Assembly: GCA_026770705.1 (NCBI GenBank) | Contig: JANJGN010000024.1 | Coordinates: forward strand, 26,908,001-26,972,000 | Reading direction: 5' to 3' | Source: Isurus oxyrinchus | Lineage: Eukaryota | Length of the DNA stretch: 64,000 nucleotides | In this document: positions 21,401-45,727 of the stretch, piece by piece | Layout of the letters: every line of letters starts with the position of its first letter | Position numbering within the stretch: the first letter of the stretch is position 1 | Notes under the pieces: model-generated | The model's input: only the letters and a program-made list of their open reading frames with translations | Database searches by the model: none | Told to the model about the DNA's origin: nothing | Position numbers and translations under genes: made by a program

Positions 21401-22657
21401 GCTGCACTCTGTTTGGCTCGGTTAGGCTTTCCCAGGCTCTGTTCTACTCTTTGGCTCTGCCAGGCCCAGTGTGGATCTGGTTGGCACTGGCAGGCTGTGG
21501 TTGGCACTGTTTGGCTCTTTCAGACTCTGCCAGGCTCTGGTCAGCTTTGTTTGGCTCTTTTTGGCTCTGCCAGCCTCTGTTTGCCTCTTTGTGGCTCTGT
21601 TTTGCTCTGTTTGTCTCTACCAGGGTCTGTTTGGCTCCGTTTGGCTCTGCCAGATGCTATTTTGCTCTGTTTAGCTCTGCCGACCTCTGTTTGACTCTGT
21701 TAGGTTTTGTAAGGCTTTATTTGCTCTGTTTGGCTCTGCAAGTCTCTGTTTGGCTCTATTTGGCATTGCCAGGCCCTGTTTCATTCTGCCAGGCACTGTG
21801 TGGCTCTGTTTGGCTTTTCCACATTCTGTTTGGATTTGCCAGGGTCAGTTTGGCTATGATTGGCTCTGTTTGGTCTGCCAGAATCTGTTTGGCTCTGTTT
21901 GGCTCTGTGTGGCTCTGCCAGACTCTTTTGAGCTCTGCCAGACTCTGTTTCGGTCACTTTGAATCCCTTTTGCTCTGTTTGTACCTATTTGGCTCAATTT
22001 GGCTCCCTTTAGCTCTGTTTGGAGCTGCCAGGCTCTGTTTGGCTCTGTTTGAGTATGCCAGGTGCTGTATGACACGGTTGGGCTATGCCACCTCTGTTTG
22101 AATCTGCCATGCTCAGTTTGGCTATGTTTGCCTCTGCCAGGATCTGTTGGGCTCTGTTTGCCTATGTTTGGCTCTGTTTGGCTCTGCAAGGCCCAGTGTG
22201 GCTCTGGTTGGCTCTGCCAGGACCTGGTTGGCACTGTCTGGCTCTTTCTGCCTCACTCAGGCTCTGGTTGGATCTGTTTGTCTCTTTTTGGCTCTGACAA
22301 GATCTATTTGGCTCTGTCTCACTCTGTTTGTCTCTGTTTCACTCTTTTTGGCTGTGCCTGGGTCTGCTTGGTTCTGTTTGGCTCTGCCAGGGTTTCTTTG
22401 GATCTGATTTACACTCTTTGGCACTGTTTGGATCTGTTTGCCTATGTTTGGCTCTGTTTGGCTCTGCCAGTCTCTGTTTGGCTATATTGGTCACTCTTTG
22501 GTTCTGTTTGGCTCTGCCAGGGTCGGTTTGGCTATATTGGTCACTCTTTGGTTCTGTTTGGCTCTGCCAGGGTCTGTTTGGCTCTGCCTAGCTCTGTTTG
22601 GCTCTGCCAGGCTCTGTTTGGGTCTGTCAGGCACTATTTGGCTCTGTTTGGCTCTGC
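6404..22657 (-). repeat. Same 10-bp satellite in inverted orientation ((TTTGGCTCTG)n on +), about 16 kb, with higher-order duplications
   Basis: Continuous TTTGGCTCTG/CCAGGCTCTG periodicity and recurring diagnostic variant blocks. Confidence 0.97.
18704..18999 (+). repeat. Local ~0.3-kb inversion inside the satellite
   Basis: Monomers switch to CAGAGCCAAA on + between about 18704 and 18999, then revert. Confidence 0.92.
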
Positions 22658-23292: not shown

Positions 23293-23341
23293 ATGTTACT
23301 GCAGCTGATGATTTTCTTTGTCACATGGATTGGTGTAGAAG
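23293..23341 (+). CDS. Exon 1, signal peptide MLLQLMIFFVTWIGVE(G)
   Basis: ATG in AACATG context, hydrophobic 16-mer, strong phase-1 donor G|GTAAGT, in frame with the V exon. Confidence 0.72.
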
Positions 23342-26300
23342 GTAAGTGCTCTGATTAAAGTCCTTTAGCCTAATTTCTGTAATACAGATATTGTTCAGAT
23401 TCCAACTTATCACAAAGGTTTGCTGATGGGGAATACTAAACAGTCAAGTGTAACACTACTGGATCATTCAAATACAATTCTGTACTAAATAATATAGCTT
23501 AACTGTACTATTTTGATACAAAGTTTCTACTTATGTCCTTAAATGATTCATATTTAAATATAATAATGTGATGGAAAATTCTTTCCTAATAAGTTACAAC
23601 TTTTACAATGTATAGATTTTGCTAGAATCTTATTATGGATTGAACATCAAGGGTGATTCAGGCACTCAAATCCACAATGTTCAAAACGTAACATCTTTTC
23701 TGGCTGCATGTATAGAATCTTTACAGTGAAAATTAATATCAATTTATTACTTAACTTCTAACCTGTATTGTTATAACAATGGTTTAGTTTGTGAGCCGAG
23801 ATTATATACTATAAAATTCACCCAAACATTCAGGCCCCAATATCAGCTCGGAGGTACAATGCAAGTGTCCTTTAAAAACAAAAATATGGCGATAGTTACA
23901 GCAAAGAAGGTCATTCAGCCTATCATCTCAATGCTGCCTGAGAAAGGGCTGGCCAGCCTAATCCCACCTTTCAGCTCTTGGATCATAGCCTTGTGGGTTA
24001 CGGTAACTCAAGGCATATCCAAGCCATTGGCCAGCAGCGTCTCAGTAGTCAGAGCAAGTCAGAGTCTGAGCAGCCTGCCTCTAACTTTGCTGAAACCATG
24101 GGGTTACACCATGAAGGAATGGTAGGAAAAGGAACAGCAAAGCTAAGTAGTTGCACAAAGGTCTGTGTACATAGATGTATGTGAAAATGTTATGTTATGA
24201 ATGTATGGTCAGAATTTTATGCTTGGCGTGCGGGCGTGCGCCCGAGTGTAATATGACGCGCGATGAGGTCGGGTGTGCATCCCGGCATCATCACGCACTC
24301 GCGCGATATTTCATTTGGCGGGCATGCGCTGGATTTGTCTGCAGTCCCACCAATAGTTGAAAGGCCTATTAAGGCCTTTAACAAGGTAATTAACTTGAAA
24401 TTTATGCTGCCAATCCAACCTAACAGTTGACAGGCAGGCGAAAAGGCCAAGCGACCTTTACATTTTTTAGGAAACCTCATCCACAAGCAGGATGAGGTTT
24501 CCTAAAGCTGTCACACATTAAATAAAACTTAATTTTGAAATTAAAATTATGTCCCATGAGGGGACATGTTTTATTAAGTTTTTATTGTATTTAATAATCT
24601 TTTTAAAAAGCACTTCAATCTCCCTGAGGCAATTCTGTGAAAACAGTTCCGTGTCTCAGGGAGATTGAAGCGCTCTTTCGCGCACATGTGTGCCAGGCCT
24701 GCTCTCCCTCTTCCCCCACCCGCACAGGTAGCTCTGAGCACTGCCGCTCATGACCAACACAGGGTGGGCCTTAATTGGTCTCCCCTGTGAAATCGGGGTC
24801 CCAACCGCCCCCACCCGCTCCCACCAAGCCCGCCCGACAAGGGAAAAATTTTGGCCTATGCTCTCTGATTCACTCGTATAAGCGGTATTATTTTGTACCG
24901 CTTTCCCATCCTGCGCATGTTGCTGGGTGACAAGTTACCTTATGACTTGTTTGATAATTGTTTGAATACTAGAATTGATTGGGACCCAAAGGTGGATGTG
25001 CAAGGGTTGGTTGTTTGTAGGACTGCTTTATCTCAGCACCATGAGATGGAGGGGAGACATCAGTCCATAGTTGAAACCTAGGGCAGAATATTGCAGTCAG
25101 CGTGCAGGGGCGTGCCCAACAAGCCGACGCGTAAAATGACGTGAGATGATGTCGGGTGTGTATCCGCGTCTGCCTCCTTCCATCCTCGCCTAGCCCACCT
25201 GACATAGGTAAGATTCAGCCCCTAATGTGAACCTTAAATTAGTAAAGGCATCCCTTGAATCTCAAGCAGTAATGAGGCTGGTGCTACACAAGCAAGGTAC
25301 AGATAGCCCTAGTGGGGGTGGGGTGGGGTGAAGGGAAGGGATCAAAATAGGTTAAAATGTAGAGATAAAATAATGGATGGAAATACATTTAAAAATAATG
25401 GAAATAGGTGGGAAAAGAAAAACCCATATAAATTATTAGAAAAAAAAGGGGGGATCGGAAAGGGGTGAAGAGGGGTGGGGAAGGAGGGGAGAGTTCATGA
25501 TCTAAAGTTGTTAAACTCAATATTCAATCCAGAAAGCTGTAAAATACCTAGTCGGAAGATTAGGTGCTATTCCTCCAGTCTGCGTTGAGTTTCACTGGAA
25601 CATTGCAGCAAGCCAAGGACGGACATGTGGGCATGAGAGCAGGGCGGTGTGATGAAATGGCAAGCGACAGGGAGGTCTGGGTCATGCTTGCGGACAGACC
25701 GAAGGTGTTCCATAAAGCGGTCACCCAGTCTGCGTTTGGTTTCTCCAATATAGAGGAAACCGCATTGGGAGCAGCGAATGCAGTAGCCTAAATTGAGGGA
25801 AGTGCAAGTGAAATGCTGCTTCACTTGAAAGGAGTGTTTGGACCCTTGGACGGTGAGGAGGGGGGAAGTAAAGGGACAGGTGTTGCACCTTCTGCGGTTG
25901 CATGGGAAGGTGCCATGGGAGGGGGTTGAGGTGGAGGGGGTGATGGAGGAGTGGACCAGGGTGCCCCAGAGGGAACGATGCCTGCAAAATGCCACCAGGG
26001 GTGGTAAAGGGAAGATCTGTTTGATGGTGGCATCATGCTGGAGTTGGCGGAAATGGCGGAGGATGATCCTTTGAATGCAGAGGCTGGTGGGGTGGTAAGT
26101 GAGGACAAGGGGGACCCTATCATGGTTCTGGGCGGGAGAGAAAGGTGTGAGGGTGGATGCATGGGAGATGGGCCGGACACGGTTGAGGGCCCTGTCAACA
26201 ACCGTGGGTAGAAAACCTCGGTTAAGAAAGAAGGAAGACATGTCAGAGGAACTGTTTTTGAAAGTGGCATCATCAGAACAGATGCAACAGAGGTGAAGGA

Positions 26301-29300: not shown

Positions 29301-32300
29301 TCTCCACTTCTGTGAAAGCAATCACTTGAAGCCCCGTCTCGTATTTCAGCAAAAGCTTTATTATAAATCAGTTGATCTTAACTTAAATAGTGAGAGCTGA
29401 GAGAGGGAGCCTGAGGGGAACCAACATAAGAGGGCGGGACGCAGATGAACCGGCAGCATTGAGTTAGTGAGGACAATCTGGTAGAGTCAGAGCTTATGAA
29501 CGCTGAAATCTGAGAAAGAAATCTTCAAAAGTGGCCTCACTGCCACAGAAGGAACAGGCAGGTATGAGTTTGTTTCTTTATTTTATTAAATTGTTCATTT
29601 CTCACTGTTAAAATTCATTTCCATTGTGTTTTCGATTGGTAGGTGTAAACTCCAGTGCCTTTTGTTAACTATCTTAGGGTCTTAGTCTTTCAGTGGTCAG
29701 TTTCTTAGAATTTTATAGATCAGCATAGGGCAATGTGGTTGAGTCTTAACAGTCATAGCACCCTCAGTTGTAACAAACCTATATGGAAAATGGCACAATT
29801 GGTTTTTCTACACCACATGAACTGTAGTGGCTCTTGACGGCAGCAAATTTTTTAAGAGATGAGCAGTAAATGCTGACCTTTCCAGCAATGCTTGCATCCT
29901 AAGAATAAACATTATTTTTTAAAAATCTCAGTATCTTACAGATGTCAGTTTCTTAGATTTTTAGAATTCAGTGTTAGGTTTTTTATCAGTCAGTAGTAAT
30001 ACAATGGCAGGTCAGCTGGGATTCATTGCATGTGTATCTTGTTCTACATGGGAACTCCAGGATACTTCATGGAACCTGGATAACCAATGTGCAGGAATTT
30101 CTGCCAGTTTCCCGAGTTCAAGCTCCAAACATCAGTGCTTGAGAAGCAGCTGGAGTCATTGTAGTGCGTCCGAGGGTCTGAGGATATCTATGTTCCAGGA
30201 TGTGGTCACCTCCATGAAAGTACAGGGGGTGAGGGAAAGACACAGGTAGTGTTGTAATTCTCCCAGTGGTACCTACTAATTAGCTTTCAGTTTTGAATAG
30301 GGGGGAGAGTCTTTTAGATTCCCCAACCAGCAAAAAGTATCTCCCAGCGTCTACCCAATCAAGACCCTTTAGAATCTTGTATGAGATGGCCTCTCATTCT
30401 TCTAAAGTCTAGAGAATATAGGCCCAATTTACTCAGCCTCCCATTTTAAGACATTAATCCTAGGCATTAATCTAGTGAAACTGCACTGTACCGGCCCCAA
30501 TGTAAGTACGTCCTTCCTTAAATATGGAGACCAAGCTGCGCACATAATAATTCCAGTCATGATCTCATTAAACCCTTGACAATTGTAGCAAGACTTATTT
30601 ATTCTTTTACTTCAACCTGCTTGCAATGAAGGCCAACATGTCATTTGCCTTCCTAATTGCTTGCTGTAGCTAACTTTCTGTGTCCCTTGTACAATTACAT
30701 CTCTCTGAACATCAACATTTACAAGTTTCACATCCTTCAAAATATGTTCTGCTTTTCTATCCTTACAACCAAAGTGAATAACCTCACGCTTCTCCACATT
30801 ATATTCCATCTGCCTCCATAGTGCCCATTCACTTAACCTGTCTATATTTCTGCAGCATCTTTATATCATCCTCACCTCTTGTACTTCCACCTAACTTTGT
30901 ATCATCAAATTTAGATTTTTTACTCTCAATCTCTTTATCTAAGTCATTAATATAGATTGTAAATAGCTGAGGCCCTTGCAGCACTCCAAGAGTTACAGCC
31001 TGCCAACTTGAAAATGTCCCTTTTATCCAAACTTTCTGCTTCCTCTCTGTCTATCCTCCATCCATACTAATTTTTATTTTATTTTCATGGGACACCGGTG
31101 TCACTGGGTAGGCTAGCAATTATTGCCAATCCCTATTGCCCTTGAGAACTGAGTGGATTGTTAAGCCATTTAAGAGTCAACCACATTGCTGTTGGTCTAG
31201 AGTCACATGTAGGCCAGACCAGATAAGAACAGAAGATTTCCTTCCCTAAAGGACATTAATGAACCAGATGGGTTTTCCTGACAATTGACATCATTAGACT
31301 TTTAATTCCAGAATTTCACCATCTGCCATGGCAGGATTCAAAACCCCAGAGAATTACCTGGGTATCTGGAGTATAATTCCGGTGACAATACCACTATGCC
31401 ACTGCCTTCCCCTACTATTAGCCCTAGCTCCATGAACCTTTGTCTTACTTGGTACCCTTTTGTGTGGCACCTTATCGAATGCCCTTTGTAAGTCCAAGTA
31501 TACTACATCTACTTATTGACCCTATTGATTACATCCTCAAAAAACTCTAATAAATTTATTAAGCACGATTTCCTTTTCATAAAACCATGTTGACTTTGTT
31601 TAATCAATAAAATATTCATGTTTACAATATATTGTGGTCATTTAGATAGGCCTAATGTACATCAATAACTTAGGGGATTAGAACCACCATTTAAACACTG
31701 TTCAATTCAATAAATATGTTTGGGGTTATTTTTGCTGTCATTTTGTGCATTGCAGGTTAATTTCCTCTCTTTACAGCAAAATGGTGAATTGTGAATTATA
31801 CATATTTAAAAATAAATAATAAAAATTCTCCATTATTTGTAGATCAGTCTGATTGGACATAAGATCATGTTAGCAATGGATAAATTTTGTTCCTTTAGGT
31901 GGTCCAGTGATTGGGGAGGTGACTCAGCCAAGTCTGGTCAGCGTCCTGCGAGGGAAGTCAGCCACGTTAAACTGTACATTTAATTACATCGCAAATGACA
32001 GCGATTGGATCCATGTATCCTGGTATGAGAACTCGTCAGGGAACATTTATAGACGATATAAAACAAATGAGAAGTTCTGCATCCCTGCCATTGCTCCAGG
32101 TGCTTTTGGCCACTGTGCTATGATTTTGAAGATTGAAAATGTTACTTTTGAAATGTCTGATAATAAGTATACCTGTACAGTGAAGGTACCGACCGCCTAC
32201 CCACCATTAGAGAAAAAAGGACAAGGAACACGATTGCATGTTGATGGTAAATTGTATATTTTGTCATAAATGTTTATATATATGGTATAACTAAATTCTT

Positions 32301-35300
32301 TAAATAAAAAATAGCATAATTACAGGTAAAGATAATAGAATATCATCTCCAATGTGATAACTTATTAATTGCTGAAACCATGGGCAGGATTTTGTGTTTT
32401 GGGTTGGCACACTGATGTCAGGGTGAAATGGGGGTCCCAACTTTGCACTGTGTTGGAAGCAGTTATCTGACAATGATTTTCCCCAAACTGGCCAATAAAT
32501 GGTCAGAGGATATGCTCACTGCCATATTAAGGATGGCAAAACTGGCAGATCAACAGAAGGCCCGCCAACAACCTGCCATTGCAGGTAAGGGATAGAGAGG
32601 GTGCCTCCATCTTGAGGCATCCTTCTTCGTGCTTTTGAAATTCATGGGCCTGAATTTTTTGTTCATTAGGAAGCGGAAAGGAAATGGGCCTCCGGCCGCG
32701 ATTGGCCCCCGACCGCGATTTCATACTGGCTGGCCAAATGCACTGAGAAATGCTCAGCGCTGCTGGGGTGGGGGTGGGAAGAGAGCAGGCACCGACCTAA
32801 CTGAGGGTGCAGGTGAGCACTTGCAGTGAGATCCCTGAAGGCAGACAGCTGCCCAGGGAGCTGCAGACCTCCACAGAACAAAGGAACGACAAAAATGCTA
32901 CAAAACATGTCCATGCAGCACAATCAAGCACTTGAAAGCATACCTCATTAAAAAAAACAGTCCCCAGTTATCTCTTTTCATTTCATTTTACCATAGAGAT
33001 TTCATCCTGCCCTGGATCAAGGTTTGAGCAAAAATGTGAATGCCACCTGGGACAATGGCTCATCCGCCAACCGTAAATGTGGACGGGCCATGTAAGTTCT
33101 CCGTTAATTGCATCATTAATGGGCTTAATTGCCCGTTTAATTGTTGGCGGGTGCGCTTCCAACTACTGGGTGCTCCCGCCGAGCAAAATATCACACGAGT
33201 GCGTAATGACGTCGGGACGCTCACCTGACATCATTTCACGCTATTTCACATCCATTAGGGCCGGGCTTTCACCCACCCGCAGGACATAAAATTCTGGCCA
33301 TGAATTTAAAAAGGGCCACAGCTGCCAGGCCACCATTGTGGAGGGGGTGGGGGGGACCATGCTCCAGGGTGGCGTGCAGCCACAAGCTATGATTAAGTAG
33401 GTAGGGAAAGCCTCAAAGCCTGGCACACTGATCTACTTGTCTGCCACCTGGATATCGTCTCCAGGCAGATGGTCTGCTCCTGAAAGCTGCAGGGGGCCTG
33501 CACACCGGCTGGAAAATTCCAGCTGGCCTCTGATAATTGATCTTCAACTTATCTTAATTGCCTACTTGCCACTGGCAGCCTGGCCGTGGGATGTGATCAG
33601 CAAGCTGGCACACCAGCCAATGGTGCAAAATTACATGTCCACCTTCACCTCCATACTTGCCCACATATTGGGGTGAAAGTTCAGCACCATGCAAATGCAA
33701 TTACATAGAAGGTAATTGGTTAAAAATGTCAGATGTAAGGTTAGATAGGTTCTATATCTGTCGAAGGGTCATGAAGACTCGAAACGTCAACTCTTTTCTT
33801 CTCCGCCAATGCTGCCAGACCTGCTGAGTTTTTCCAGGTAATTCTGTTTTTGTTTTGCATTTCCAGCATCCTCAGTTCTCTTTGTTTTTATCTATATTTA
33901 TGATGTTTGTATCTTATGGGAGACTGCCCGTTTTACTACTGAATTTTTACATGTAGCTTCTTAGATGTCAACTTTAACTGCAATAATTCCATTTTGGCAT
34001 CTTATAATATTTGTGTATATGCATTATACATATAATTAATGATTTTCCATTCTAATTCTTATTTTTTTCTTAATTATGCAGAATAATTCAATTTAACTTA
34101 AATTCTTGGAAAAAAAAATCCAACATAATTTTAGATCTTTCATTACTTGAAAATCCAGAAACAACTTTGTGGCACCGTACCATAAATCCTATCTAATTTT
34201 AGGGTATCTATTGGCATGTTAAAGCAATAACATAAATCAAAAAGTGTCACTACAAAATAAAGAGAATATAGATACATACTGCACATTTATTACAAAAACA
34301 GTGATGCATGACATAGGCAAAAAGTGGGGTCCACATTGGTATGCATTGGATAAATTTGGGTTTAAAGATGTTAAATCCCAAAATTCCCATTAAAAATAAC
34401 AATGGGATTCATGCAAAATTTGACATTTTAGAGAAAAATGTAAGAATGAATAACTGAAACGCCTTTCTTGTCACAAAAGTGAAGGAGCTTTTGTGTGACT
34501 CTATTACTCAATGGGTTAGGCAATCTTCCAAGATTGAGATACAAATTATAGTCCCTGAGTATCCTCTGCATAATTTATTGAAATTAAGTTGCAATGTGTA
34601 ATGAGTGTGTAAAAATGCTTGACATTGGTTTAATATTGCTTCCTTTATCATTTATATGCAACATAACTTTAGTTTGTATTGTATGTTACAGTTCTGCCAT
34701 CTCCTCCGGCAATCTCTATTACTCAGGGAATATTAGTAGCTGAGAAAGAGTCTGTTTTGTCTTGCCATGCTGCAGGATTTTATCCTCAGAATATCTCCAT
34801 TAAATGGCTGCACCAAGAACAAAGTATTTCTCACAATGCTCTATCTTCACAACCAGATGTTAAATTGAGATATACGACTCGAGAGTCCACCTCCAGAAAC
34901 TCAGATGGCACATTTAACACTACCAGTCAATTGATTTTTATCCCCACTTTGCAAGACCATAGGACAATCTGTATTTGTCAGGTCCATCATATGACAAATA
35001 AAGAGCGAATAATAAAAGAGATACGGCTAAATGTGAATTGTAAGTATGTGAAACTCATGTGTTTTTTTATAGGCCTTTTGTTTTTAATTTTTAATTTGTA
35101 GCTGACTTCTAATGTAAGTTTGAAGTGGCCTAGCTGCTGACTGCTTCGTTGAAGCTTCAGAAGGTAATTAGGCAATATCAGGCTGGAGTGCACATATGAT
35201 GGCACGCTGAGCTTGGAATGCCCAGAATAGGATACTGTCTTGTCAGCTGTGACCTGGCTCTGAAATCCAGCTCAGATGGTTGGGATGATTTAGAAGCAGG

Positions 35301-38300: not shown

Positions 38301-41300
38301 TGACCAGGTTATTGAACCTGTCTATATGACTAATTACTTTCCATTTCCATTGTTCTGCTTCAGATGGTCCACAGCTTGACATATATTACAGAACTTCTGA
38401 CTCAGATATGCCCCATCCACTGCTTCAAGACTTCATTCATGTTAAGCACCAGTCGTTTCTTGAACTAAACTGTACAGCGGACAGTAACCCAGCATCCACA
38501 GTTATCTGGATAAAGAAATCTGGGGAGCAAAGTGGAGACATACAATTGGCTGCTGGAGTAAATATTTCGATTCTGAAGGAAATGAGTGTTGATAATTCAG
38601 ACAGTGGAAAGTATATTTGCAAAGCGCACAATGCACATGACTCAAAAGAATATGCTGTAAAGATATACTTAATATCTGATTTGCGAAGTAAGTGCCAAAG
38701 TGAATGCCTTTTTTTCCTTTATGAATTATTGGTGTGGAACAAACTGAGGCAAGAGCAACTTATTATACACATAAAGCATCCACACATCTTTTAGCTTTCC
38801 AATGCCTATTCACATGTCAAACCAAGATGATTTGATTCTCTGGAATACAGTTCATTAAGTAAAATAACCTGATGATCAATAAGGCCATAAACTATTCAAG
38901 GTATAGTGCCTACAAAAAGGATTAGATGAATACTTGACTCCTTCACTTAATTTGATATCACAAAAATATCTGGGGATTAACCATCCATGTTTAGAGAATT
39001 GCTGAATACCTCTAGATTTCCCTCACTTGAACCATCTTGCACTAACTAGTCTGAAGAAGATTAATATTAATATTAAAGTGACCAACCATCCATCGAAAGA
39101 CCAGTAGACTGCTGAGAAATGGAGTTAACCTCAAAGAGAAAGTCGCACACCAAAACCATGAATGAACATTTCATCATGAGCATACACATTAGAATAAAAT
39201 TAGCAGCATTAGAAGTATACAAGGTATTTGAATAGGAGTTATTAACTGACAATTAGCATCTGAGGTTACTACAGCAGTTTGAATGGATCACAGTAAATCA
39301 CTACAAATAGAGATCTACTTACCTGAAGTTGATATTATGCTTATGGTTGAAAATTGACATGAAGGCAACAAAATTTGTTTAGGTTAGATTTCCTATTTAG
39401 CTGCAAAGTTAACAGCTTTGAGCAGTAAGTATGTAAAATATATTAGGACTAGTTTGATCTGTACATTTCTGAGGGGCTCACAGTTTAGTAATATTCCTAG
39501 GTCTTATACAAAATTGTTCATGAAAATTAACATAAGGCTGGATTTTACAAGGCAACATGTCCCCAGCTAAAAGGTCAGGGGTTAGGGGAGTCCGCCCACA
39601 ATCCCCAATGTTGATGAGCCTGGGTAAGTCTGGGATCAAGGGTCTAGGTGAGGGGAATTGGGGGACCAGGTTCAACAGGCCAGGGGAAAGTTTAAAGGCA
39701 GGGGGTCACCTTGTTGCTGGGGGGAGGGGGACGCCTCCAAAGGGGCCATTAATTGCCCAATTAAGGGCCTCAAAAAATAGCATCCTGCCCTCCCATAGAA
39801 TTTCAGATAGGCTGGGGATGTGGGTAGGGAGCTGTAAGGCTGGATTTTTGGTGCCCTCTTCCTTCAAGCATGCTGGTGAGGAGCATAAAATCCAGCCCGC
39901 AGAGTTTAGTGGCCTCACCTCTCTTTGTATTGCTTGTGCTAGTTTCAGAGATATCAGCATAATTAACCTCTGCTATCATCATATCTCATCTTCTTCTTTC
40001 TCACGGGCATTAACCTTGCTTGTGTTCTCGAGAACTTCACTTACAAACAAGTTAACTCACAAACTCTATAGTCCTGGCTAAATGTGGGGCATCAAGTCAG
40101 ACTGTATGCTGGACAGTTCTGCAAACTGTTCTGATTCAGAATGCACAGATGTGGTTGAAACTTTTTTCATCTGTTTTGAGGTTTAAAAAAGCCCAATTGG
40201 CTCTCAGGCCTTTGAAGCAGATTGAGGCATTAAAGCAAAAAAACAGCCCTGTGGCTAAATTTAATTGTCATAGTGTAAAATGTAACTTATATTTTTTTTA
40301 TTTCTTCAGAACTTAACTTTAGATATTAGAAATTTTATTGCCAGAGAAAATAAAGTGGATGTAATTATTTTGAAAAAGCATTTTGAATGATTTGATTGGT
40401 TCTTAACAAATTGTTAATAGTGAATTGTTTATCGCTGGATAAACCTTTGCTATTATAACTGTTGGCTTCCATTCTAAACATTTCCCATGGATTTTCAATG
40501 TTAAATGTTGATATTCAAATTGTGATTCAACATCTTGTCACATGACCCAAGATTTTGTAATGTGAATATAAATATACCACAATTGCCCAGGCCCAAATAT
40601 CACAAGGGTTAAACTCAACATTTCAGCTGATCAATCATTTCTGGAGAAAAAATATATACATTGAAGGAAAACAGCTTAACAACAGACAGGTTAGCAGTGT
40701 TTGTGAAAATACCTTTATCTGTAGTAGATAATACTAAGTTTAAAACAGTGATATTACCTTACCAAGACATACTGAGTTATAGAAATAGATGTATTCCTAC
40801 TTTCTACACAGTGGGACAGAAATCCTGCACTGAAATTATTGGAGAAAATGAAATTTAATTCACAAATGGTAATGATCATACAATATTGAGTCAGTAAACC
40901 ATGAACGCAATTTAGCTCCTATTTGCCAGCATTCTTTTACACTGAAGCAGGTCGTAAGAAACTCAAAATACTTTTCTGTTCCTTCACAGGTGGTTTTCCT
41001 ATCCAATCTATAACATTCCCAATCTTTGTGGTCTCTGTCACTTTATTACTGATCTGTTACAGTAGACTGGAAGGTAAAGGTAAATAAATTAACCGACATC
41101 TAACGTGAAGCACAAATGTGAAGTGACAGTTTTAATAGATATTGACTCAGTCACTGGTTGACGTGATTTGGTTTGGTTAAGAGGATTTGAAATGAGAAAG
41201 AAAGTAAGTCACCAAACCTGCTCAATAAAGTGTTCATATGATGATTGGTCATGGGAAAATTATAGTCAGCACCACCGAGTGGTTGCAAGATATCGTAAAT

Positions 41301-44300
41301 GAAGTATCAGAGAGATAGCATGTTGGCAAATTATGGATGTGCATGGCTATTTAGTGCTGAATCTCCGGATTAAGTAAAGTGGTAATTTAAAAGGATGATC
41401 ATAAACAACTGTAAATGGAACTAAGTGGAAAGGTGTAGACATTTTATTTTGAAACACAGGGGCTTAAGCTGAAATAAGATCATAAAAAAATACCTTTCTG
41501 AAAATGATTAATAACGGATTGCAGTTTTGGGGGTAATAAAGTGGCGTGTTTATATTTCGTTTAAAAGTCTGAAATTTACTGGAATGTGGTGGCTTAGAAG
41601 GATATAATAGCATTGAAATGCAATGTTGTGGTTACACAGTCCAGCAGTCCCTGTGTGTGGAAGTCCTGTTCAAGGCAATTGCATAATTATTCAGTCTCCC
41701 TCATGAATTACAGACAGTAAAGGTAAATAGGTGTGCCAGGTCCTGAACGTGTAGTCCTTCAACAAGGGCAAGAGTTTACCAAATAACTCAGGTGAAATGA
41801 TAAAACAAAAATAGAATTACCTGGAAAAACTCAGTAGGTCTGGCAGCATCGGCGGAGAAGAAAAGAGTTGACGTTTCGAGTCCTCATGACCCTTCAACAG
41901 ATCTGATGCCTGCTTTCCTGTTCTAAGTCTAGGAGCACCATCGGAATTTTGAAAGGGGTTTCTCATGGCTGAAAAATTTGCACATTGCAAGTAACATGTC
42001 AGCAGCCAGCAGGAGTATGGTGGGCAGTGTCATCTGTAGCAGTAATGTTGAAAGAAACAAACACCATAAACAACTTATGCATCAAAACATTGCAGAAATA
42101 GATAAGCAGAAATGGTGAAAAGAAAGCTGTCAATATAATAATAATCAAATAGAGCTTAAAAATCTCCCAAATGTTACAGCAACAAAGCATATAAAAAGAG
42201 TGACCAGATGAAAAAATTGACATTGCAGAATATTCCTAATAATCCACAATTCTACTCCTTTCACAGGTCAGTACTGCCCTTACAACTGTAGGTAAGTCAC
42301 AAGCTAACCTCTCACTCTTTTAGTGTAAATGTTGGAATCAACAGTTTGAGATCATTTGCACCAAAGAACATGCATATTTACAACACCGGAAACAACCTTA
42401 ATCATGCAGTTCAGGAAGTTCTAAACCTCAGACCCTGACTTCCTTTTACACTCTGCGCCAGATAGCAGGGTTTGGACGAACTGAAGTTTCCCGAGACTAA
42501 AGTATGGAATGCCAGCCAGGAGAGCATTGCAATTGTCAGTCAGCTTGGAAGTCACAAACACTTCCAAACACCACCTTCTCCAACCCCAACCACCACGAAC
42601 CTCACCTCCATCCGCCATCACCCAGAGAGGCCTCCAAGCCATCCCCCCTGACCCCCAGACCTCCCATTCCCTACCCCCAAACTTTTGGCCCGGGCCCCCC
42701 ACCACATATCCACCAGGATCACCAACCAATCCCATCCTGGAATCAGGCCATGGTCAGAATCAACACCACCCTCACCCGAGATTAACCCCCATACCCCCAC
42801 CAGAGGTGTGGACATGGATCTACCTTGTCCTAGGGCCTCTGCTGGATCACTCCCCATTCAACTGAAAGCCAAGTCTGTCAGTCAGGGGAATCTGTCGGTG
42901 ATGACACACATACAAACCGTACCCCATGGATATGGGGCAACCCTGACTTCTGGGTCACCTGGGCCCTACTGAGACTGTAATAGAGACTGGATCAACTGAG
43001 GCTTTCAAAGGGCAATTGGATAATTGGCTGAAAGGGAAAAAAAATATTGCCAGGCTACGGAGAAAAGGCAGGGAAGTGGCACTAGGTGAGTTGCTTCTTC
43101 AGAGGGCCAGCACAAACACGATGGGTTCAATAACTCCTTCTGGATTTTAAACACTCACAGCTGGTCAGCTAAATTAAAATCCTGCCTTATGGCAGTAACC
43201 CTGCTTGGTCTGGATGACAGATTCTGACAACACAGGAGCAATGGAGGGTCTGGGACAGGTAGTGGAGTGGTAGAAAGATGCATCATCAGTAAGTAAGTAT
43301 GTAAGTTGAATACATGGCCAGGATTTTCCTATGGTGGGCAGGCTGACGGGAGCAGACTGGGTTGGGCATGGAGCCAATTGCCACCCGCGATTAGCTACGT
43401 GCTGCCATTTTACGAGGACGGGCCAATTAAGGCCCGCCCAGCATAATATGTGAGCATCACGTTACCTGTGCAGGCTGGGGTGGGGGGGGGGGGGGGTGCG
43501 TTGGTGGTGGGGGGGGGGTGCGGGGTGGCGGGGAGGAGGGAGAGTTGGGGCCAGCGCTTATTCGTGTGCATGGAGCTGCCTCAGGGAGATTGAATGGATA
43601 TGAAAATAATTAAAGTATCGATTTAAAAATTTATTCAAACATGTCCCCTCATGTGACTGTGTCACATGAGTGGAGGTGTGTTTTAATACTTATGAAAATG
43701 TATTTATTTAATAAAAGGTTCAGGAAACCTCATCTCACCCGTGGAAGAGGTTTCCTGAAAAACAAGAAGGCCACTTGGGCTTTTTGTCTGCCCGCCAACC
43801 TTAAGTCTGAATGGGCAGCGTTCTTAAGTGCTTTAATTAATTTCTTAATGGCCTTAATAGGCCGTTGACATTTCTGCGGGTGCGCAGCCGACTCCGGCAC
43901 GCGCCTGCTGGACGAAATATTGTGATGGCACGCGATGACGCCGGGAAAGTTGCCCGACATTATCATGCGTCATTTTACATGTCGGCGTGTCTTGCCCCCG
44001 CATGCCTACTGGAGGATTCAGCCCCATGTTTTCAGATGATGTGTAGATGAGGAAGAGGACGGGATCAAGCATAGATTCTTGGAGGACTCCAGAAGAGGTC
44101 TGGGGGCTGGAAGAGAAGACATTCCTGGAGATGTTCTAAGTTTGGATAGGTAAGAGTAAAACTAAGCAACAGCAGTCCCACTGAGCTAAATAACTCAGAG
44201 ACATTGGAAAAGGATGATGTGATTGATCATGACATAGGCTCCAGGAAAATCAAAAGGCTTAAAATGTGTTAGTGAGCTATGGTAACAGCCATAGAATATG

Positions 44301-45727
44301 TCATTTTACTTTGATTAGGGCTGTTTCAGTGCTATGGCAGGAGAGGAAACCTGTTTGGAGCAGATTGAAGCAGGGAGTTATAGAAAAGATAGGCATCATT
44401 TTAGGAGATGAAAGGACATTCAAAGAGATTGGCAGGGAAAGAGAAGTCAGTAATTTGTGAGGACAGAGAGAAAAAGTAATTCATTTTTGAGGAGACAGTA
44501 ATGGCAGCATTTTAAAACAGAGATAGAATGTACTTGAAAGGGAACTGTTTACAATGTCAGCTAGCTTGGGGACCAAAAAAAACATTGGAGGGTGGGGAAT
44601 TTAGTGAAATCAGTGTCAAGGTAGAAAATGGGGTCTCTTGGATGAGATGAGCTCAAAGAAGTCATGACGGGAAATGAGAGAGAATCTAGAGAAAGGTGGG
44701 GGTTGAGGGCAGGGTTGGTCTTGGATGATTTAGATGGTAAGTAAGGGAAAGAGAAGTAGCAAGAGCAGCTGAATGGTTGGTCTCAATATTAGTGACAATG
44801 AAGTCCATGAGCTGCTCACGCTTGTTGAAGGTAATGGTGAATGGCCGGCAGGAGATATAGATTCAAGAAATGGTTGGTAGTCGAGAAAAGAAGAGCGAAT
44901 TGAATATCAAGACTATGAACTGAAGCAGATAAACCAAACATGAGCACAAGACAAGTGCACTTAAGAGGTTTTACCCAACATATATAAATCACAAATCTAG
45001 GATGTGACTCCTTACTGGAACTTCAGACTTACAAAGCACAATACAAAGTGAAACAAGAAAGTCTAATCACAGTATCACTGAAGACTGTGGCTTAAGCCAC
45101 AAAAGACCCAAGCCGTTACCTCCTCTCAAACATACCACCACAAATAACATCCAGTGCTTTTTGCACAGAGCACAAATCATTCAGCTTCATTTATATTGCT
45201 AAGGCACTGCATCAGTAGGCAGTGTGATTTTAGAAGCAATAAGTCATCCTCAAATTTACCAGACCTCTGCAAGGATTTAACAATTAAAGTGCAGGACAAT
45301 AACTTGGCTGGACTGCCATAAAGCCTTTTTTCTCAGCTAATCTCAGTCCTTTTTTAATCAAAATATGGACAAAAAGATAGCAAATCATCTTTTAACGTGA
45401 AGGCTTGTTTACCTCCTGAGCAGTGTTAGCAGCTAATTATAGTTCTTCATTGCCTCAGTAAAAAGTAAATAAATTAAGTTGTATGATGTCTGTGGTAGAA
45501 GCTGATTTGATAGATTAAATTACCTTGCACATTTTATGCTTTATTTCCATAGGGCAATTTTAAATGAGATTCACTGCAGCAGAATGATAGATTCATCCCT
45601 TACAGCTTTGCCATTTTTTTTTCTCATTAGGAACTCAAAGCAACATGGGAACCAAGGAAGATCAGGTGAAAGTGACACTGTAGAAGATGTTGATGTCCAT
45701 AAGGAAATAACAACATCAGAACTCTGA
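23293..45727 (+). CDS. 7-exon IgSF type I membrane protein: leader-V(J-type)-C1-C2/I-TM-cytoplasmic, ~426 aa (424 with the upstream TM donor)
   Basis: Join 23293-23341, 31899-32246, 34692-35039, 38364-38687, 40990-41079, 42267-42291, 45631-45727. All introns are GT-AG, phases 1,1,1,1,1,2 are compatible, and the 1281 nt are open to TGA. Confidence 0.82.
24207..24856 (+). mobile_element. PIF/Harbinger-type MITE
   Basis: TIRs GGTCAGAATTTT / AAAATTTTGGCC, 3-bp TSD TAT. Same family as 32647 and 43316, which are in the opposite orientation. Confidence 0.72.
25081..25221. mobile_element. Short Harbinger-type MITE
   Basis: GGGCAGAAT...ATTCAGCCC with TSD CTA. Confidence 0.62.
25288..28002 (-). mobile_element. 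Penelope-like retroelement (RT + GIY-YIG), 5'-truncated and frameshifted, with inverted pseudo-LTR
   Basis: RT motifs IKPADKGGAVV, FYLLPKIHK..GRPI, DIQSLYTSVP and GVAMGTHMGPSYA (26555-27390). Also FLDL, YKPT..HSYL...SSHP, and GIY-YIG YCIRCSQCGFLYIGETKRRL..RF.EH (25567-26526). 27395-27650 is an inverted copy of 25288-25560. Confidence 0.93.
29400..30310 (+). mobile_element. Decayed CR1-type LINE 5' region (ORF1 N-terminus)
   Basis: MAGQLGFIACVSCSTWELQD followed, after a frameshift, by CRNFCQ...LEKQLESL, resembling the CR1 ORF1 Cys/leucine-zipper start. Boundaries approximate. Confidence 0.5.
30315..31620 (-). mobile_element. Decayed CR1 LINE ORF2 3' part, interrupted by a SINE
   Basis: MEYNVEKREVIHFG is a CR1 RT C-terminal motif; RT-like sequence resumes after 31412. 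Confidence 0.72.
31075..31412 (-). mobile_element. tRNA-derived DeuSINE (SacSINE1-like)
   Basis: Core GTCACATGTAGGCCAGACCAG..CCTTCCCTAAAGGACATT..GAACCAGATGGG, tRNA-like head and LINE-shared tail. Inverse of the copy at 48204. Confidence 0.8.
31899..32246 (+). CDS. Exon 2, Ig V-set domain with built-in J-like G strand
   Basis: Acceptor TTTTGTTCCTTTAG|. Translation VTQP..VSVLRGKSATLNC...VSWY...LKIENV...YTC...GQGTRLHV. Phase-1 donor G|GTAAAT. Confidence 0.93.
32382..33687. mobile_element. Harbinger-type MITE (TSD CAT) containing a nested MITE at 32647-33299 (TSD ATG)
   Basis: Outer ends GGGCAGGATTTT / AAAGTTCAGCAC; inner ends GGCCTGAATTTT / AAAATTCTGGCC. Confidence 0.68.
33758..33892 (+). mobile_element. 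Penelope tail fragment with hammerhead-like core
   Basis: CTGTCGA-A-GGGTC-atgaa-GACTC-GAAAC-GTC-AACT, with a TCTATAT direct repeat at 33751 and 33891. Confidence 0.78.
34692..35039 (+). CDS. Exon 3, Ig C1-set domain
   Basis: C1 signatures LSCHAAGFYPQNISIKWL, RNSDGTFNTTSQL and CQVHH. Acceptor TTACAG|, donor T|GTAAGT, phase 1-1. Confidence 0.93.
35290..35760 (-). mobile_element. CR1 LINE 3'-end fragment with a small MITE inserted at 35542-35683
   Basis: Typical CR1 3' end (AGAAGCAGGATTAGGCCACTCGGCCC...); the insert starts with the TIR-like GGCTGGAATTTT. Confidence 0.65.
36520..38025. mobile_element. Foldback (long palindromic) non-autonomous DNA transposon
   Basis: Nested inverted matches centred near 37300 (37178-37269 vs 37337-37430; 37142-37164 vs 37461-37483; 36991 vs 37616). 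Right end GTGAAAATCCAGGCC; left end approximate. Confidence 0.72.
38364..38687 (+). CDS. Exon 4, Ig C2/I-set domain
   Basis: (LNVN)YGPQL...LELNCTADSNPASTVIW...DSGKYICKAHN. Acceptor TTCTGCTTCAG|, donor A|GTAAGT. Confidence 0.92.
39536..39898. mobile_element. Harbinger-type MITE
   Basis: TIRs GGCTGGATTTTA / TAAAATCCAGCCC. Confidence 0.65.
40990..41079 (+). CDS. Exon 5, transmembrane segment (SGFPIQSITFPIFVVSVTLLLICYSRLEGK)
   Basis: Polypyrimidine acceptor CTTTTCTGTTCCTTCACAG| and an uncharged hydrophobic stretch. Two phase-1 donors, after 41073 and 41079. Confidence 0.78.
41802..41900 (-). mobile_element. Penelope tail fragment with hammerhead-like core
   Basis: Reverse complement reads CTGTTGAAGGGTCATGAGGACTCGAAACGTCAACTC. 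Confidence 0.8.
42267..42291 (+). CDS. Exon 6, 25-nt cytoplasmic micro-exon (GQYCPYNC R)
   Basis: Acceptor TCCTTTCACAG| and donor AG|GTAAGT. It converts phase 1 to phase 2, exactly as the last exon needs. Confidence 0.66.
43316..44024 (-). mobile_element. Harbinger-type MITE (TSD CAT)
   Basis: GGCCAGGATTTT...GGATTCAGCCC; inverted homologue of 24207-24856. Confidence 0.72.
44030..44850 (-). mobile_element. Highly decayed L2-type LINE fragment
   Basis: Purine-rich + strand; the minus strand near 44780-44820 reads EQLMDFIVTNIET, an L2-like ORF2 motif. Confidence 0.45.
45631..45727 (+). CDS. Exon 7, cytoplasmic tail NSKQHGNQGRSGESDTVEDVDVHKEITTSEL*
   Basis: Acceptor TTTTTTTTTCTCATTAG|, phase 2, stop TGA at 45725-45727. 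Confidence 0.66.

What the first reader, a model, noticed from the sequence alone, without database searches (positions are those of the whole stretch)
23293..45727. Intact non-rearranging receptor with germline-joined VJ + C1 + C2 domains
Seen: seven exons splice in frame into a ~426-aa type I protein. The V exon itself encodes the J-like G strand (GQGTRLHV) and is followed by a true C1-set exon (CxAxGFYP..I.IxW, NSDGTF, CxVxH) and a C2/I domain. No RSS was found. Known: C1 domains are largely limited to Ig/TCR/MHC, tapasin, B7, SIRP and nectin/CADM-type proteins, and a single-exon VJ joined to C1 is the proposed layout of the pre-RAG antigen-receptor ancestor. SIRP is V-C1-C1, NKp30 is a lone VJ, and nectins/CADM are V-C1-C2 but typically lack a clear GxGT J motif. 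Inference: this is a chondrichthyan hybrid between antigen-receptor-like and nectin/CTX-like families, possibly uncharacterised. I cannot assign an orthologue.
Basis: partly seen in the sequence, partly recalled or inferred. Interest (0 to 1): 0.8.

Follow-up and report, generated by a model that had tools for sequence, protein, structure and literature searches.

The report
Shark V(J)-C1-Ig membrane receptor gene
This is an intact shark gene for a surface protein with an antibody-like V domain (J piece built in), a true antibody-type constant domain and a third plain Ig domain; sharks and rays share it, databases hold it under misleading automatic names, and I found no paper on it.

Summary
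Seven GT-AG exons on the + strand (23293-45727) read in frame for 424 codons: leader, V-set exon ending in GQGTRLHV, C1-set exon, I-set exon, TM exon, a 25-nt micro-exon and a tail exon. There is no RSS. The C1 exon meets all three classical C1 sequence hallmarks, and its model (pLDDT 87) has a C1-type strand order.

Gene models from Pristiophorus, Hemiscyllium, Scyliorhinus and the ray Hemitrygon match every exon at 50-72% identity. They confirm the exon 3 to exon 4 junction (35039 to 38364). Their names ("sialoadhesin-like", "Siglec-10/11", "syg-2-like") are automatic misnomers. The sawshark has a second paralogue, and a conger eel protein (V(J)-C1-C1-Ig) looks like a distant relative.

Outside this family the nearest sequence relatives are SIRP, B7-H6 and UrIg2, at 42% identity or less. 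Nectins match only by fold and layout. The tail has no ITIM or ITAM and ends in a conserved class I PDZ ligand.

My reading: a new architectural variant among non-rearranging V(J)-C1 proteins, probably an adhesion or recognition receptor. Expression, the leader exon and synteny remain unproven. This scan has met other SIRP-like V-C1 families in this genome, but not this gene.

The parts
23293..23341 (+).
   Evidence: The donor AAG|GTAAGT is perfect. No homologue or RNA supports it. The intron to the V exon would be 8.5 kb and holds a retroelement.
31716..31755 (+). Alternative candidate leader exon B: ATG, MFGVIFAVILCIA, then 1 nt, phase 1, 143-bp leader intron
   Evidence: It has the highest hydrophobicity of all ATG / phase-1 / GT candidates between 22657 and 31880. 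The donor CAG|GTTAAT is weak. The short intron gives the 'split leader' layout of antigen-receptor V genes. Untested.
31899..32246 (+). V-set exon with the J-like G strand (KKGQGTRLHVD) in the same exon. Canonical Cys/Trp/YxC residues, an extra conserved Cys pair (C-IPAIAPGAFGH-C) and 4 N-glycosylation sequons.
   Evidence: Pfam V-set 27.5 bits. Best PDB sequence matches are Ig light-chain V domains, at E 2e-4 and weaker. 64% identical to the P0009 V domain. The Cys pair is conserved in P0009 and P0182.
34692..35039 (+). Classical C1-set exon: FYP in the BC loop, 13 residues from the B-strand Cys to the C-strand Trp, C-QVHH after the F-strand Cys, and NSDGTF
   Evidence: Pfam C1-set 46.9 bits. 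PDB sequence matches are UrIg2, SIRP alpha/gamma and B7-H6. The AF2 model has pLDDT 87.2 with strands A B C C' D E F G. Structural matches are MHC II, beta-2-microglobulin, SIRP d2 and nectin-like D2.
38364..38687 (+). I-set / C2-type Ig exon (GPQLDIYY...LELNCTADSNPASTVIW...DSGKYICKAHN...)
   Evidence: Pfam Ig_3 37.3 and I-set 35.3 bits. Homologue models read NVN-Y-GPQ across the junction. The contig pattern in run X5 fits a 35039 to 38364 splice.
40990..41073 (+). Transmembrane exon (GFPIQSITFPIFVVSVTLLLICYSRLE); no charged residue in the helix
42267..42291 (+). 25-nt cytoplasmic micro-exon (G-QYCPYNC-R), juxtamembrane Cys motif
   Evidence: Found by a frame and splice-site scan and read. Aligns with RYGPCNCR (P0009), WCGPCNSG (P0097) and RCFLCNRR (P0026). 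Strong polypyrimidine acceptor, GTAAGT donor.
45631..45727 (+). Last coding exon: NSKQHGNQGRSGESDTVEDVDVHKEITTSEL, then stop. Acidic cluster and a C-terminal S-E-L (class I PDZ-ligand form).
   Evidence: The tails of P0097 (ITTSEL), P0026 (IMTSEF) and P0009 (KITEF) keep [S/T]-E-[L/F] at the C-terminus.

Best explanation
Window 23293-45727 (+) holds an intact, germline-fixed (non-rearranging) gene for a 424-residue type I membrane glycoprotein.

Layout, from the N-terminus:
- signal peptide
- V domain whose G strand carries a J-like GxGTxLxV motif, encoded in the V exon itself
- one classical C1-set domain
- one membrane-proximal I-set domain
- an uncharged TM helix
- a cytoplasmic tail of about 45 residues

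It belongs to a small gene family conserved in sharks and rays, with at least two paralogues in a sawshark. A conger eel protein is a probable distant relative. The family's V-C1 part lies in the SIRP / B7-H6 / UrIg2 sequence neighbourhood, but it is not orthologous to any of them.

Inferred working:
- The glycosylated V domain at the tip binds a conserved ligand.
- The C1 domain may pair with another chain, as C1 domains usually do.
- The tail has no ITIM, ITSM or ITAM and there is no charged TM residue. It has juxtamembrane cysteines, an acidic cluster and a conserved C-terminal [S/T]-E-[L/F]. This tethers the protein to PDZ scaffolds.

So it most likely acts as a cell-cell recognition or adhesion receptor, in the manner of nectin, CADM or CRTAM, rather than as a SIRP-type inhibitory or activating immune receptor.

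Shown: gene structure, domain types, absence of RSS, conservation, nearest relatives. Inferred: expression, ligand binding, dimerisation, PDZ anchoring.
For: - Exon model with canonical splice sites, open frames and 424 codons.
- Domain types by Pfam.
- All three C1 hallmarks described in PMC2785349 are visible in the exon 3 translation.
- C1 exon model at pLDDT 87 with a D strand and an EF helix. Classical C1 domains are among its top structural matches.
- No RSS.
- Orthologue-level hits P0009, P0011, P0026, P0097 and P0024 at 50-72% identity cover every exon. Paralogue P0182.
- Family C1 HMM: members score about 200 bits, the next best about 60 bits.
- Careful ML tree of C1 domains. The five family rows form a clade (99/91*). 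That clade plus P0182 and the two Conger C1 domains has support 94/86. It lies apart from the B7-H6 ectodomain clade (97/99*), mammalian SIRP d3 and the UrIg2-like domains.
- Named relatives: SIRP at 26-28% identity over V-C1. SIRP alpha d3 scores 40 bits, SIRP gamma d3 42.7, B7-H6 54.3 and UrIg2 66.6 (summed) in the PDB profile search.
- Conger P0160 shares the V J-motif (RGAGTNLSLHV), the C1 domain (42% identity) and the C1-to-Ig junction LNV[NR]YGP.
- Tail motifs are conserved across species.
- The contig break pattern in run X5 matches a spliced 35039|38364 junction.
Against: - No direct RNA evidence. The laid runs are contigs of guessed kind and mostly run colinear with the genome through introns. 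The splice in X5 is inferred from contig ends, because I could not see the 30 unplaced letters.
- The leader exon is ambiguous: 23293 versus 31716.
- Function rests on motifs alone.
- V-domain similarity to anything outside the family is weak. It scores 18-19 bits against the mammalian SIRP V domains in my set of retrieved proteins, and PDB E-values are 2e-4 and weaker.
- The backbone of the C1 tree is unresolved, and the tree holds no Ig, TCR, MHC, tapasin, nectin or CRTAM rows.
- Structure does not separate classical C1 from nectin-like D2. Z-scores of 12-13.7 are all tied.
- The whole-protein model of orthologue P0009 was unusable (pLDDT 40).
Confidence: 0.6

Rival explanations
1. It is the elasmobranch orthologue (or co-orthologue) of SIRP: a myeloid V-C1-C1 receptor for CD47 that has swapped its last C1 domain for an I-set domain and lost its ITIM tail.
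For: The only named full-length relatives found by the word search are SIRP alpha and beta, at 26-28% identity. Within the proteins I retrieved, the family V HMM aligns end to end only with mammalian SIRP V domains. SIRP has the same J-like motif and the same C1 hallmarks.
Against: The architecture differs (one C1 plus an I-set). There are no ITIMs and no charged TM residue. The C1 tree does not join the family to mammalian SIRP d3 or to the reptile, amphibian and coelacanth SIRP-like clades. Similarity to B7-H6 and UrIg2 is as high as to SIRP. Other notes of this scan report separate SIRP-like V-C1-ITIM families in this genome, which would be better candidates (unchecked).
Confidence: 0.1
2. 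It is a divergent member of the nectin / nectin-like (CADM) / CRTAM adhesion group (V, C1-like, C2/I, TM, PDZ-binding tail) whose second domain happens to keep classical C1 motifs.
For: The overall layout is the same, including a C-terminal PDZ-type motif. The best VIA matches of the C1 model include Necl-4 D2 (Z 13.2) and Rst D2 (Z 13.7). Atlas neighbours of orthologue P0009, by structure and by features, include CADM1/3-like and nectin-3 clusters. Nectin-3 D3 matches exon 4 at 25.5 bits.
Against: No nectin or CADM chain appears among the 60 best listed PDB sequence matches of the C1 exon or of the family profile. SIRP, UrIg2, B7-H6, IgM and MHC do. Pfam C1-set outscores C2-set_2. FYP, the 13-residue spacing and xVxH are all present; the paper found them lacking in C1-like domains such as CD80 d2 and Lutheran d2 (PMC2785349). 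CRTAM could not be tested because no tool gave me a sequence for it.
Confidence: 0.15
3. It is a Siglec-type sialic-acid lectin, as the automatic names of its orthologues say (Siglec-10/11/13, sialoadhesin-like).
For: Automatic names. MAG, Siglec-8 and CD22 appear among weaker PDB and fold matches through the third domain and part of the second. Atlas feature neighbours are named Siglec.
Against: From established knowledge of the family, Siglec V domains carry an essential F-strand Arg, have a B-E intrasheet disulfide in place of the B-F one, and are followed by C2-set domains. Here the V domain has the canonical B-F Cys pair, the F strand reads YTCTVKV with no Arg, a J-like G strand is present, and the second domain is C1-set.
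Confidence: 0.03
4. It is a surviving relic close to the pre-RAG antigen-receptor precursor, in the sense proposed for UrIg and UrIg2.
For: Single-exon VJ followed by a C1 domain. A possible short split leader. The top summed PDB hit of the C1 exon is UrIg2. The best PDB V matches are Ig light-chain V domains.
Against: UrIg and UrIg2 have three or more C1 domains and no I-set domain (PMC12227049). The UrIg2-like C domains of the white shark do not group with this family. Linkage to the MHC or the antigen-receptor complex could not be tested, and the window holds no neighbouring gene. PDB is dominated by antibodies, so top V hits to light chains carry little weight.
Confidence: 0.08
5. It is an unexpressed gene copy whose open frame is retained by chance or by recent death.
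For: No run on record as RNA holds the stretch. Most contigs are colinear with the genome.
Against: Seven exons are open with canonical splice sites. All exons, including the 25-nt micro-exon and the C-terminal motif, are conserved across sharks and a ray. The contig pattern in X5 fits a spliced form.
Confidence: 0.04

Closest known systems
SIRP family (SIRP alpha/beta/gamma; structures 2wng, 4i2x)
   Same: N-terminal V domain with a J-like G-x-G-T-x-L-x-V strand encoded in the germline. It is followed by a classical C1-set domain with FYP, a 13-residue Cys-Trp spacing and xVxH. It is the best named full-length sequence relative (26-28% identity; 40-43 bits for d3).
   Different: SIRP is V-C1-C1 with ITIMs (alpha) or a charged TM residue (beta). 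This gene is V-C1-I-set with an uncharged TM helix and a short PDZ-type tail. The C1 tree does not unite them. One 2026 survey dates the SIRP family to Tetrapoda (PMC13262535).
B7-H6 / NCR3LG1 (structures 6yjp, 3pv6, 4zso)
   Same: V followed by a classical C1 domain. It gives the best single-stretch PDB sequence match of the family profile (54.3 bits, spanning the end of V and the C1).
   Different: B7-H6 has two ectodomains and no I-set domain. The ectodomain C1 domains of vertebrate B7-H6-like proteins form their own clade (97/99*) that excludes this family.
UrIg and UrIg2 (PMC12227049; structure 9dmx)
   Same: Non-rearranging elasmobranch genes with a single-exon VJ domain followed by C1 domains. 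UrIg2 is the top summed PDB hit of the C1 exon.
   Different: UrIg is VJ plus 3 C1 and secreted. UrIg2 is VJ plus 9-11 C1 plus TM. Neither has an I-set domain or a PDZ-type tail. The white-shark UrIg2-like C domains do not group with this family.
Nectin / nectin-like (CADM) / CRTAM adhesion molecules
   Same: Three-Ig layout (V, C1-type fold, C2/I), single TM helix and a short tail ending in a PDZ-binding motif. Fold matches to Necl-4 D2 and nectin-1 D2, and Atlas structural neighbours. This is the group it most likely works like.
   Different: The sequence of domain 2 is classical C1, not the CD80-like C2-set_2 type. The V domain has a J-like motif. There are no nectin or CADM sequence matches to V or C1 among the 60 best listed. 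The C-terminal motif is class I ([S/T]-E-[L/F]); the nectin and CADM C-terminal motifs differ from it (from my own knowledge, not tested here).
Siglecs (the automatic names of the orthologues)
   Same: A V domain followed by Ig domains. The third domain has the ..C.ADSNP...W.. look of Siglec, CD22 and MAG C2 domains.
   Different: No F-strand Arg, a canonical B-F disulfide, a J-like strand and a C1-set second domain. It is not a Siglec.

Membership tests
Rearranging antigen receptors (Ig/TCR) | V and J (and D) as separate gene segments flanked by RSS (heptamer, 12/23 spacer, nonamer) | tested here: not met
   V through the J-like strand is one open exon, 31899-32246. No heptamer-spacer-nonamer anywhere in the window, and lone heptamers occur at the chance rate.
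Classical C1-set Ig domain | (F/Y)(F/Y/H)P at the start of the BC loop, 13 residues between the B-strand Cys and the C-strand Trp, and xVxH after the F-strand Cys (PMC2785349) | tested here: met
   C-HAAGFYPQNISIK-W gives 13 residues. FYP is present. C-QVHH is present. Pfam C1-set scores 46.9 bits against a cut-off of 21.
Classical C1-set Ig domain | C1 strand topology (A B E D / C' C F G, with a D strand) and structural similarity to Ig, MHC and beta-2-microglobulin constant domains | tested here: met
   The AF2 model of exon 3 (pLDDT 87.2) has strands A, B, C, C', D, E, F and G plus an EF helix. Foldseek's top matches are MHC II alpha2/beta2 and beta-2-microglobulin. VIA ties these with nectin-like D2 and RAGE C1 (Z 12-13.7), so structure alone does not exclude the C1-like class.
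SIRP family | V-C1-C1 ectodomain | tested here: not met
   The third domain is I-set/Ig_3 with none of the C1 hallmarks.
SIRP family | Cytoplasmic ITIMs (alpha) or a charged TM residue for DAP12 (beta) | tested here: not met
   The TM sequence FPIFVVSVTLLLICY is uncharged. The tail has no [ILVS]xYxx[ILV] or YxxL/I pair.
SIRP family | Groups with SIRP domains in a phylogeny | tested here: inconclusive
   The C1 tree backbone is unresolved. The family is not sister to mammalian SIRP d3 or to the SIRP-like clades. The tree has no outgroups.
SIRP family | Binds CD47 | not testable with these tools
   Needs protein binding assays.
B7-H6 (NCR3LG1) | V-C1 ectodomain that groups with B7-H6 C1 domains | tested here: not met
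   The B7-H6 ectodomain C1 clade (97/99*) excludes the family. This gene also has an extra I-set domain.
UrIg / UrIg2 | Single-exon VJ followed by three or more C1 domains, linked to the MHC (UrIg) or to the Ig/TCR complex (UrIg2) | tested here: not met
   Only one C1 domain, followed by an I-set domain.
Nectin / nectin-like (CADM) | V, CD80-like C2-set_2 and C2/I domains, with sequence relationship to nectin/CADM domains | tested here: inconclusive
   Layout and fold agree. Only exon 4 gives a nectin sequence match (nectin-3 D3, 25.5 bits). Exon 3 scores higher as C1-set than as C2-set_2. No nectin or CADM sequences were available for a tree.
Nectin / nectin-like (CADM) | C-terminal PDZ-binding motif | tested here: met
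   A PDZ-type C-terminus is present (-TSEL, -TSEF, -ITEF). It has the class I form, which is not the nectin or CADM motif (the latter from my own knowledge). Binding itself was not tested.
Siglec | F-strand arginine for sialic acid, a B-E disulfide in the V domain, and C2-set domains after V | tested here: not met
   The F strand reads KYTCTVKV, with the canonical Cys and no Arg. The second domain is C1-set.

The most novel reading that the evidence does not exclude
The family is an ancient gnathostome lineage, found in elasmobranchs and with a V(J)-C1-C1-Ig relative in a teleost. In it an antigen-receptor-type VJ-C1 module sits on an adhesion-molecule chassis: a membrane-proximal I-set domain and a PDZ-anchored tail. 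If it maps to the MHC, the antigen-receptor complex or one of their paralogons, it would be a third independent non-rearranging VJ-C1 lineage beside UrIg/UrIg2 and SIRP. It would also be a living link between adhesion IgSF proteins and the antigen-receptor stem.
Probability: 0.12. Interest if true: 0.75.

Novelty: new variant of a known kind. Interest (0 to 1): 0.45.

Why it matters
Classical C1-set domains are largely confined to Ig, TCR, MHC, beta-2-microglobulin, tapasin, SIRP and a few relatives. Germline-joined VJ-C1 genes in cartilaginous fish are the material used to reason about what the RAG transposon invaded (PMC12227049, PMC10751288).

This gene adds a conserved elasmobranch family with a layout not described in any paper I could find: VJ-like V, one true C1, an I-set domain and a PDZ-type tail. 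It shows that public shark and ray annotations mislabel the family as Siglecs. It also suggests that SIRP-type V-C1 modules predate tetrapods, where one recent survey places the SIRP family.

The weight is limited. Other V(J)-C1 families are already known or noted in this genome. Function, expression and chromosomal linkage are all untested.

Tried and rejected
- **Exon 4 acceptors at 38391 and 38405.** The first gives a TAA with the phase-1 donor. Both were dropped once the strong acceptor at 38363|38364 proved to fit the frame, the homologue junction NVN-Y-GPQ and the X5 contig.
- **Alternative exon 3 donor at 35043/35044.** Rejected for the same reasons.
- **Word search with the bare C1 exon.** It found nothing. 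This is uninformative, because only proteins of 63-201 aa were eligible.
- **Protein Atlas with the window's exon.** Closed for new sequences. I used orthologue P0009 instead. It gave only architecture-level neighbours (Siglec, nectin, CADM).
- **The look-up of encoding contigs.** Closed, so there are no orthologous loci, no synteny and no extra V exons.
- **Read laying.** No listed joint for exons 3-4. The listed joints all lie within or between high-copy intron repeats. Most contigs are colinear with the genome, so the runs look like DNA or pre-mRNA. Only the contig ends in X5 speak for splicing.
- **AF2 of the whole orthologue P0009 with a 10-row alignment.** pLDDT 40, discarded.
- **Regex search for the exon 6 motif of the homologues.** Failed. 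A splice and frame scan then found the exon.
- **V-only word search.** Found only a paralogue and no named outside relative.
- **Literature.** The UrIg 2023 paper (PMC10530332) is not held. The search for 'PRARP' returned only unrelated papers. No paper describing this family turned up.
- **Joined protein.** All searches of the window's gene were exon by exon. Natural orthologue models served as the full-length stand-ins.

Full report
**What is there**

The + strand between 23293 and 45727 carries seven exons with canonical GT-AG boundaries and no internal stops. The total is 1275 nt, which is 424 codons plus TGA.

| Exon | Coordinates | Content |
|---|---|---|
| 1 | 23293-23341 | Leader, MLLQLMIFFVTWIGVE, donor GTAAGT |
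| 2 | 31899-32246 | V domain |
| 3 | 34692-35039 | C1 domain |
| 4 | 38364-38687 | Third Ig domain |
| 5 | 40990-41073 | TM helix |
| 6 | 42267-42291 | 25-nt micro-exon, QYCPYNC |
| 7 | 45631-45727 | NSKQ...VEDVDVHKEITTSEL, stop |

Exons 2 to 5 are all phase 1-1, the usual pattern for Ig-superfamily genes. The window has no N.

The window's gene was searched exon by exon, and natural orthologue models served as full-length stand-ins.

**Domain types**

Pfam calls exon 2 V-set (27.5 bits). It calls exon 3 C1-set (46.9 bits, with CD80-like C2-set_2 second at 38.5). It calls exon 4 Ig_3/I-set (37/35 bits).

The V exon has the canonical Cys, Trp and YxC residues. It ends in KKGQGTRLHVD, so a J-like GxGTxLxV G strand is encoded in the V exon itself.

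There is no heptamer-spacer-nonamer RSS anywhere in the window. Lone CACAGTG heptamers occur at the chance rate.

Exon 3 meets the three sequence hallmarks that Hatherley et al. use to separate classical C1 from C1-like domains (PMC2785349):
- FYP at the start of the BC loop
- exactly 13 residues between the B-strand Cys and the C-strand Trp
- C-QVHH after the F-strand Cys

An AlphaFold model of exon 3, built with a 25-row alignment, reached pLDDT 87.2. It shows strands A, B, C, C', D, E, F and G plus the EF helix.

Foldseek ranks MHC class II alpha2/beta2 and beta-2-microglobulin first. VIA-align ties these at Z 12-13.7 with SIRP d2, RAGE C1, Necl-4 D2 and Rst D2. So the fold is C1-type, but structure alone cannot separate classical C1 from the nectin-like class. 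The sequence hallmarks make that separation.

**Is it a real gene**

An exhaustive HMMER search with the C1 exon, together with the names returned by the word search, found orthologue-level models:

| Protein | Species | Automatic name | Length |
|---|---|---|---|
| P0009 | Pristiophorus japonicus | sialoadhesin-like | 408 aa |
| P0011 | Hemiscyllium ocellatum | Siglec-10 | 272 aa |
| P0097 | Scyliorhinus torazame | Siglec-11 | 234 aa |
| P0026 | Hemitrygon akajei (a ray) | syg-2-like | 342 aa |
| P0024 | not on record | (fragment) | 138 aa |

tblastn of these models on the window hits exactly my exons and nothing else:
- V 64%, C1 67% and D3 53% to P0009
- D3 68% and tail 71% to P0097

All the models read LNV[NK]-Y-GP across the C1-to-Ig junction. 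This fixes the exon 3 to exon 4 splice at 35039|38364 and rules out the nearer AG dinucleotides.

The micro-exon aligns with RYGPCNCR, WCGPCNSG and RCFLCNRR in the homologues.

A V-only search added a sawshark paralogue, P0182 ("Siglec-13"). Its V domain is 53% identical to that of P0009 and has the same extra Cys pair.

**RNA evidence is weak**

No holder is on record as RNA. Most contigs laid on 32760-38759 are colinear with the genome through introns.

One run gives an indirect sign of splicing. In run X5:
- one contig ends exactly at 35039
- the next starts at 35010 and runs on into the intron
- a third has 30 unplaced letters followed by 38364-38447

This is the pattern a 31-mer assembly graph gives where spliced and unspliced forms branch at the donor. 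I could not see the 30 letters, so this is an inference.

The leader is also open. A second candidate, 31716-31755 (MFGVIFAVILCIA), lies 143 bp upstream of the V exon. It would give the short split-leader layout of antigen-receptor V genes, but it has a weak donor.

**What it is related to**

A family C1 HMM scores members at about 200 bits and everything else at 60 bits or less, so this is a distinct orthogroup.

The next relatives of the C1 domain are:
- SIRP-like proteins of reptiles, amphibians and coelacanth
- NCR3LG1 (B7-H6)-like proteins
- a white-shark UrIg2-like protein

Against solved structures the family profile scores as follows:

| Match | Bits |
|---|---|
| SIRP alpha d3 | 40 |
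| SIRP gamma d3 | 42.7 |
| B7-H6 (one stretch) | 54.3 |
| UrIg2 (summed) | 66.6 |

No nectin or CADM chain is among the 60 best listed matches.

The V domain is only weakly like anything else:
- Ig light-chain V domains in PDB, at E 2e-4 and weaker
- mammalian SIRP V domains, at 18-19 bits, within my set of retrieved proteins

PDB is rich in antibodies, so the light-chain hits carry little weight.

A careful ML tree of 51 C1 domains gives these results:
- The five family rows form one clade (99/91*).
- That clade joins the paralogue P0182 and the two C1 domains of a Conger conger "MAG-like" protein, at 94/86.
- The group stands apart from the B7-H6 ectodomain clade (97/99*), mammalian SIRP d3 and the UrIg2-like domains.
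- The backbone is unresolved.
- The tree has no Ig, TCR, MHC, nectin or CRTAM rows, because no tool gave me those sequences.

The Conger protein (P0160) is V(J: RGAGTNLSLHV)-C1-C1-Ig-TM. It shares the LNVRYGP junction motif, so the family may be older than elasmobranchs.

**How it probably works**

The TM helix is uncharged. The tail has no ITIM, ITSM or ITAM. Instead it has:
- juxtamembrane cysteines
- an acidic cluster
- a C-terminus conserved as -TSEL, -TSEF or -ITEF, which is the class I PDZ-ligand form [S/T]-x-hydrophobic

The V domain is conserved about as well as the C1 domain between distant sharks (64% against 67%). It carries four N-glycosylation sequons.

I therefore read it as a cell-surface recognition or adhesion receptor with a fixed ligand, anchored to PDZ scaffolds. 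It works like nectin, CADM or CRTAM while being built from a SIRP- or antigen-receptor-type V-C1 module. This step is inferred, not shown.

**Comparison and novelty**

- It is not a rearranging receptor (no RSS).
- It is not a SIRP. The third domain is wrong, it lacks ITIMs and a charged TM residue, and the tree does not unite them.
- It is not B7-H6 or UrIg/UrIg2, by both architecture and tree.
- It is not a Siglec. It has no F-strand Arg, it has a canonical disulfide, and its second domain is C1.
- Nectin/CADM membership is unproven: layout and fold agree, sequence does not.

UrIg and UrIg2 are published non-rearranging VJ-C1 genes of elasmobranchs (PMC12227049).

Other notes of this scan report many SIRP-like V-C1-ITIM genes and B7-H6-like genes in this same genome. 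These are unchecked leads.

I found no paper describing this V(J)-C1-I-set family. One survey dates the SIRP family to Tetrapoda (PMC13262535).

My verdict: a real, intact and conserved gene, and a new architectural variant among known non-rearranging V(J)-C1 proteins. It is already present but misnamed in public annotations. It is of moderate interest until expression, linkage and ligand are known.

- The Atlas did not take new sequences.
- The whole-protein model of P0009 failed (pLDDT 40).

Noticed in passing
window 2-4033 and 6613-22656: Two very large arrays of a 10-bp satellite. The unit is CAGAGCCAAA for about 403 copies, and its reverse complement TCTGTTTGGC for about 1607 copies. The two arrays are in inverted orientation, with extreme AT skew (+0.7 and -0.6). 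The second array ends about 640 bp upstream of the candidate start codon at 23293. The long 'ORFs' listed there (LALFGSVWLC...) are artefacts of the repeat.
   Followed up: partly
window 25567-27481 (- strand), inside intron 1: Two adjacent long ORFs (319 and 308 aa) of a retroelement. The upstream one has a weak RVT_1 match (22.8 bits). By eye, the downstream one has a GIY-YIG-like stretch (CGFLYIGETKRRLGDRFMEHL) as in Penelope-like elements, but Pfam gave no hit for it.
   Followed up: partly
window 61622-62716 (- strand): Fragments of a reverse transcriptase of the LINE type (RVT_1 37.3 bits for 61925-62425). P0026, the ray gene model, starts with a matching RT-like peptide (MDFSKAIDKV...), so that model is probably fused to a repeat at its 5' end.
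   Followed up: partly
window 38688-38794 and 35040-35101: The open frames that read through the donors of exon 4 (SKCQSECLFFLYELLVWNKLRQE...) and exon 3 (CKYVKLMCFF...) resemble the C-termini of the models P0011 (SKCKSECSSLYEYSVQNKLRYE) and P0024 (CKYVHFMLFHYN). Either those models are read-through artefacts and intron starts are conserved among slowly evolving sharks, or truncated secreted isoforms exist.
   Followed up: no
window 31716-31755: A strongly hydrophobic ATG-initiated mini-exon (MFGVIFAVILCIA, phase 1) lies 143 bp upstream of the V exon. It is a possible alternative or true leader, and would give the short split-leader layout of antigen-receptor V genes.
   Followed up: partly
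window 33560-33960 and 35160-35760: Intron stretches with contig depth in the thousands to hundreds of thousands in all four runs laid. They are high-copy repeats (probably SINE-like) in introns 2 and 3.
   Followed up: no
P0160 / P0093 (Conger conger, not in the window): A teleost 'myelin-associated glycoprotein-like' model is in fact V(J-like)-C1-C1-Ig-TM. It shares the C1-to-Ig junction motif LNVRYGP with the shark family, and is another misnamed relative.
   Followed up: partly
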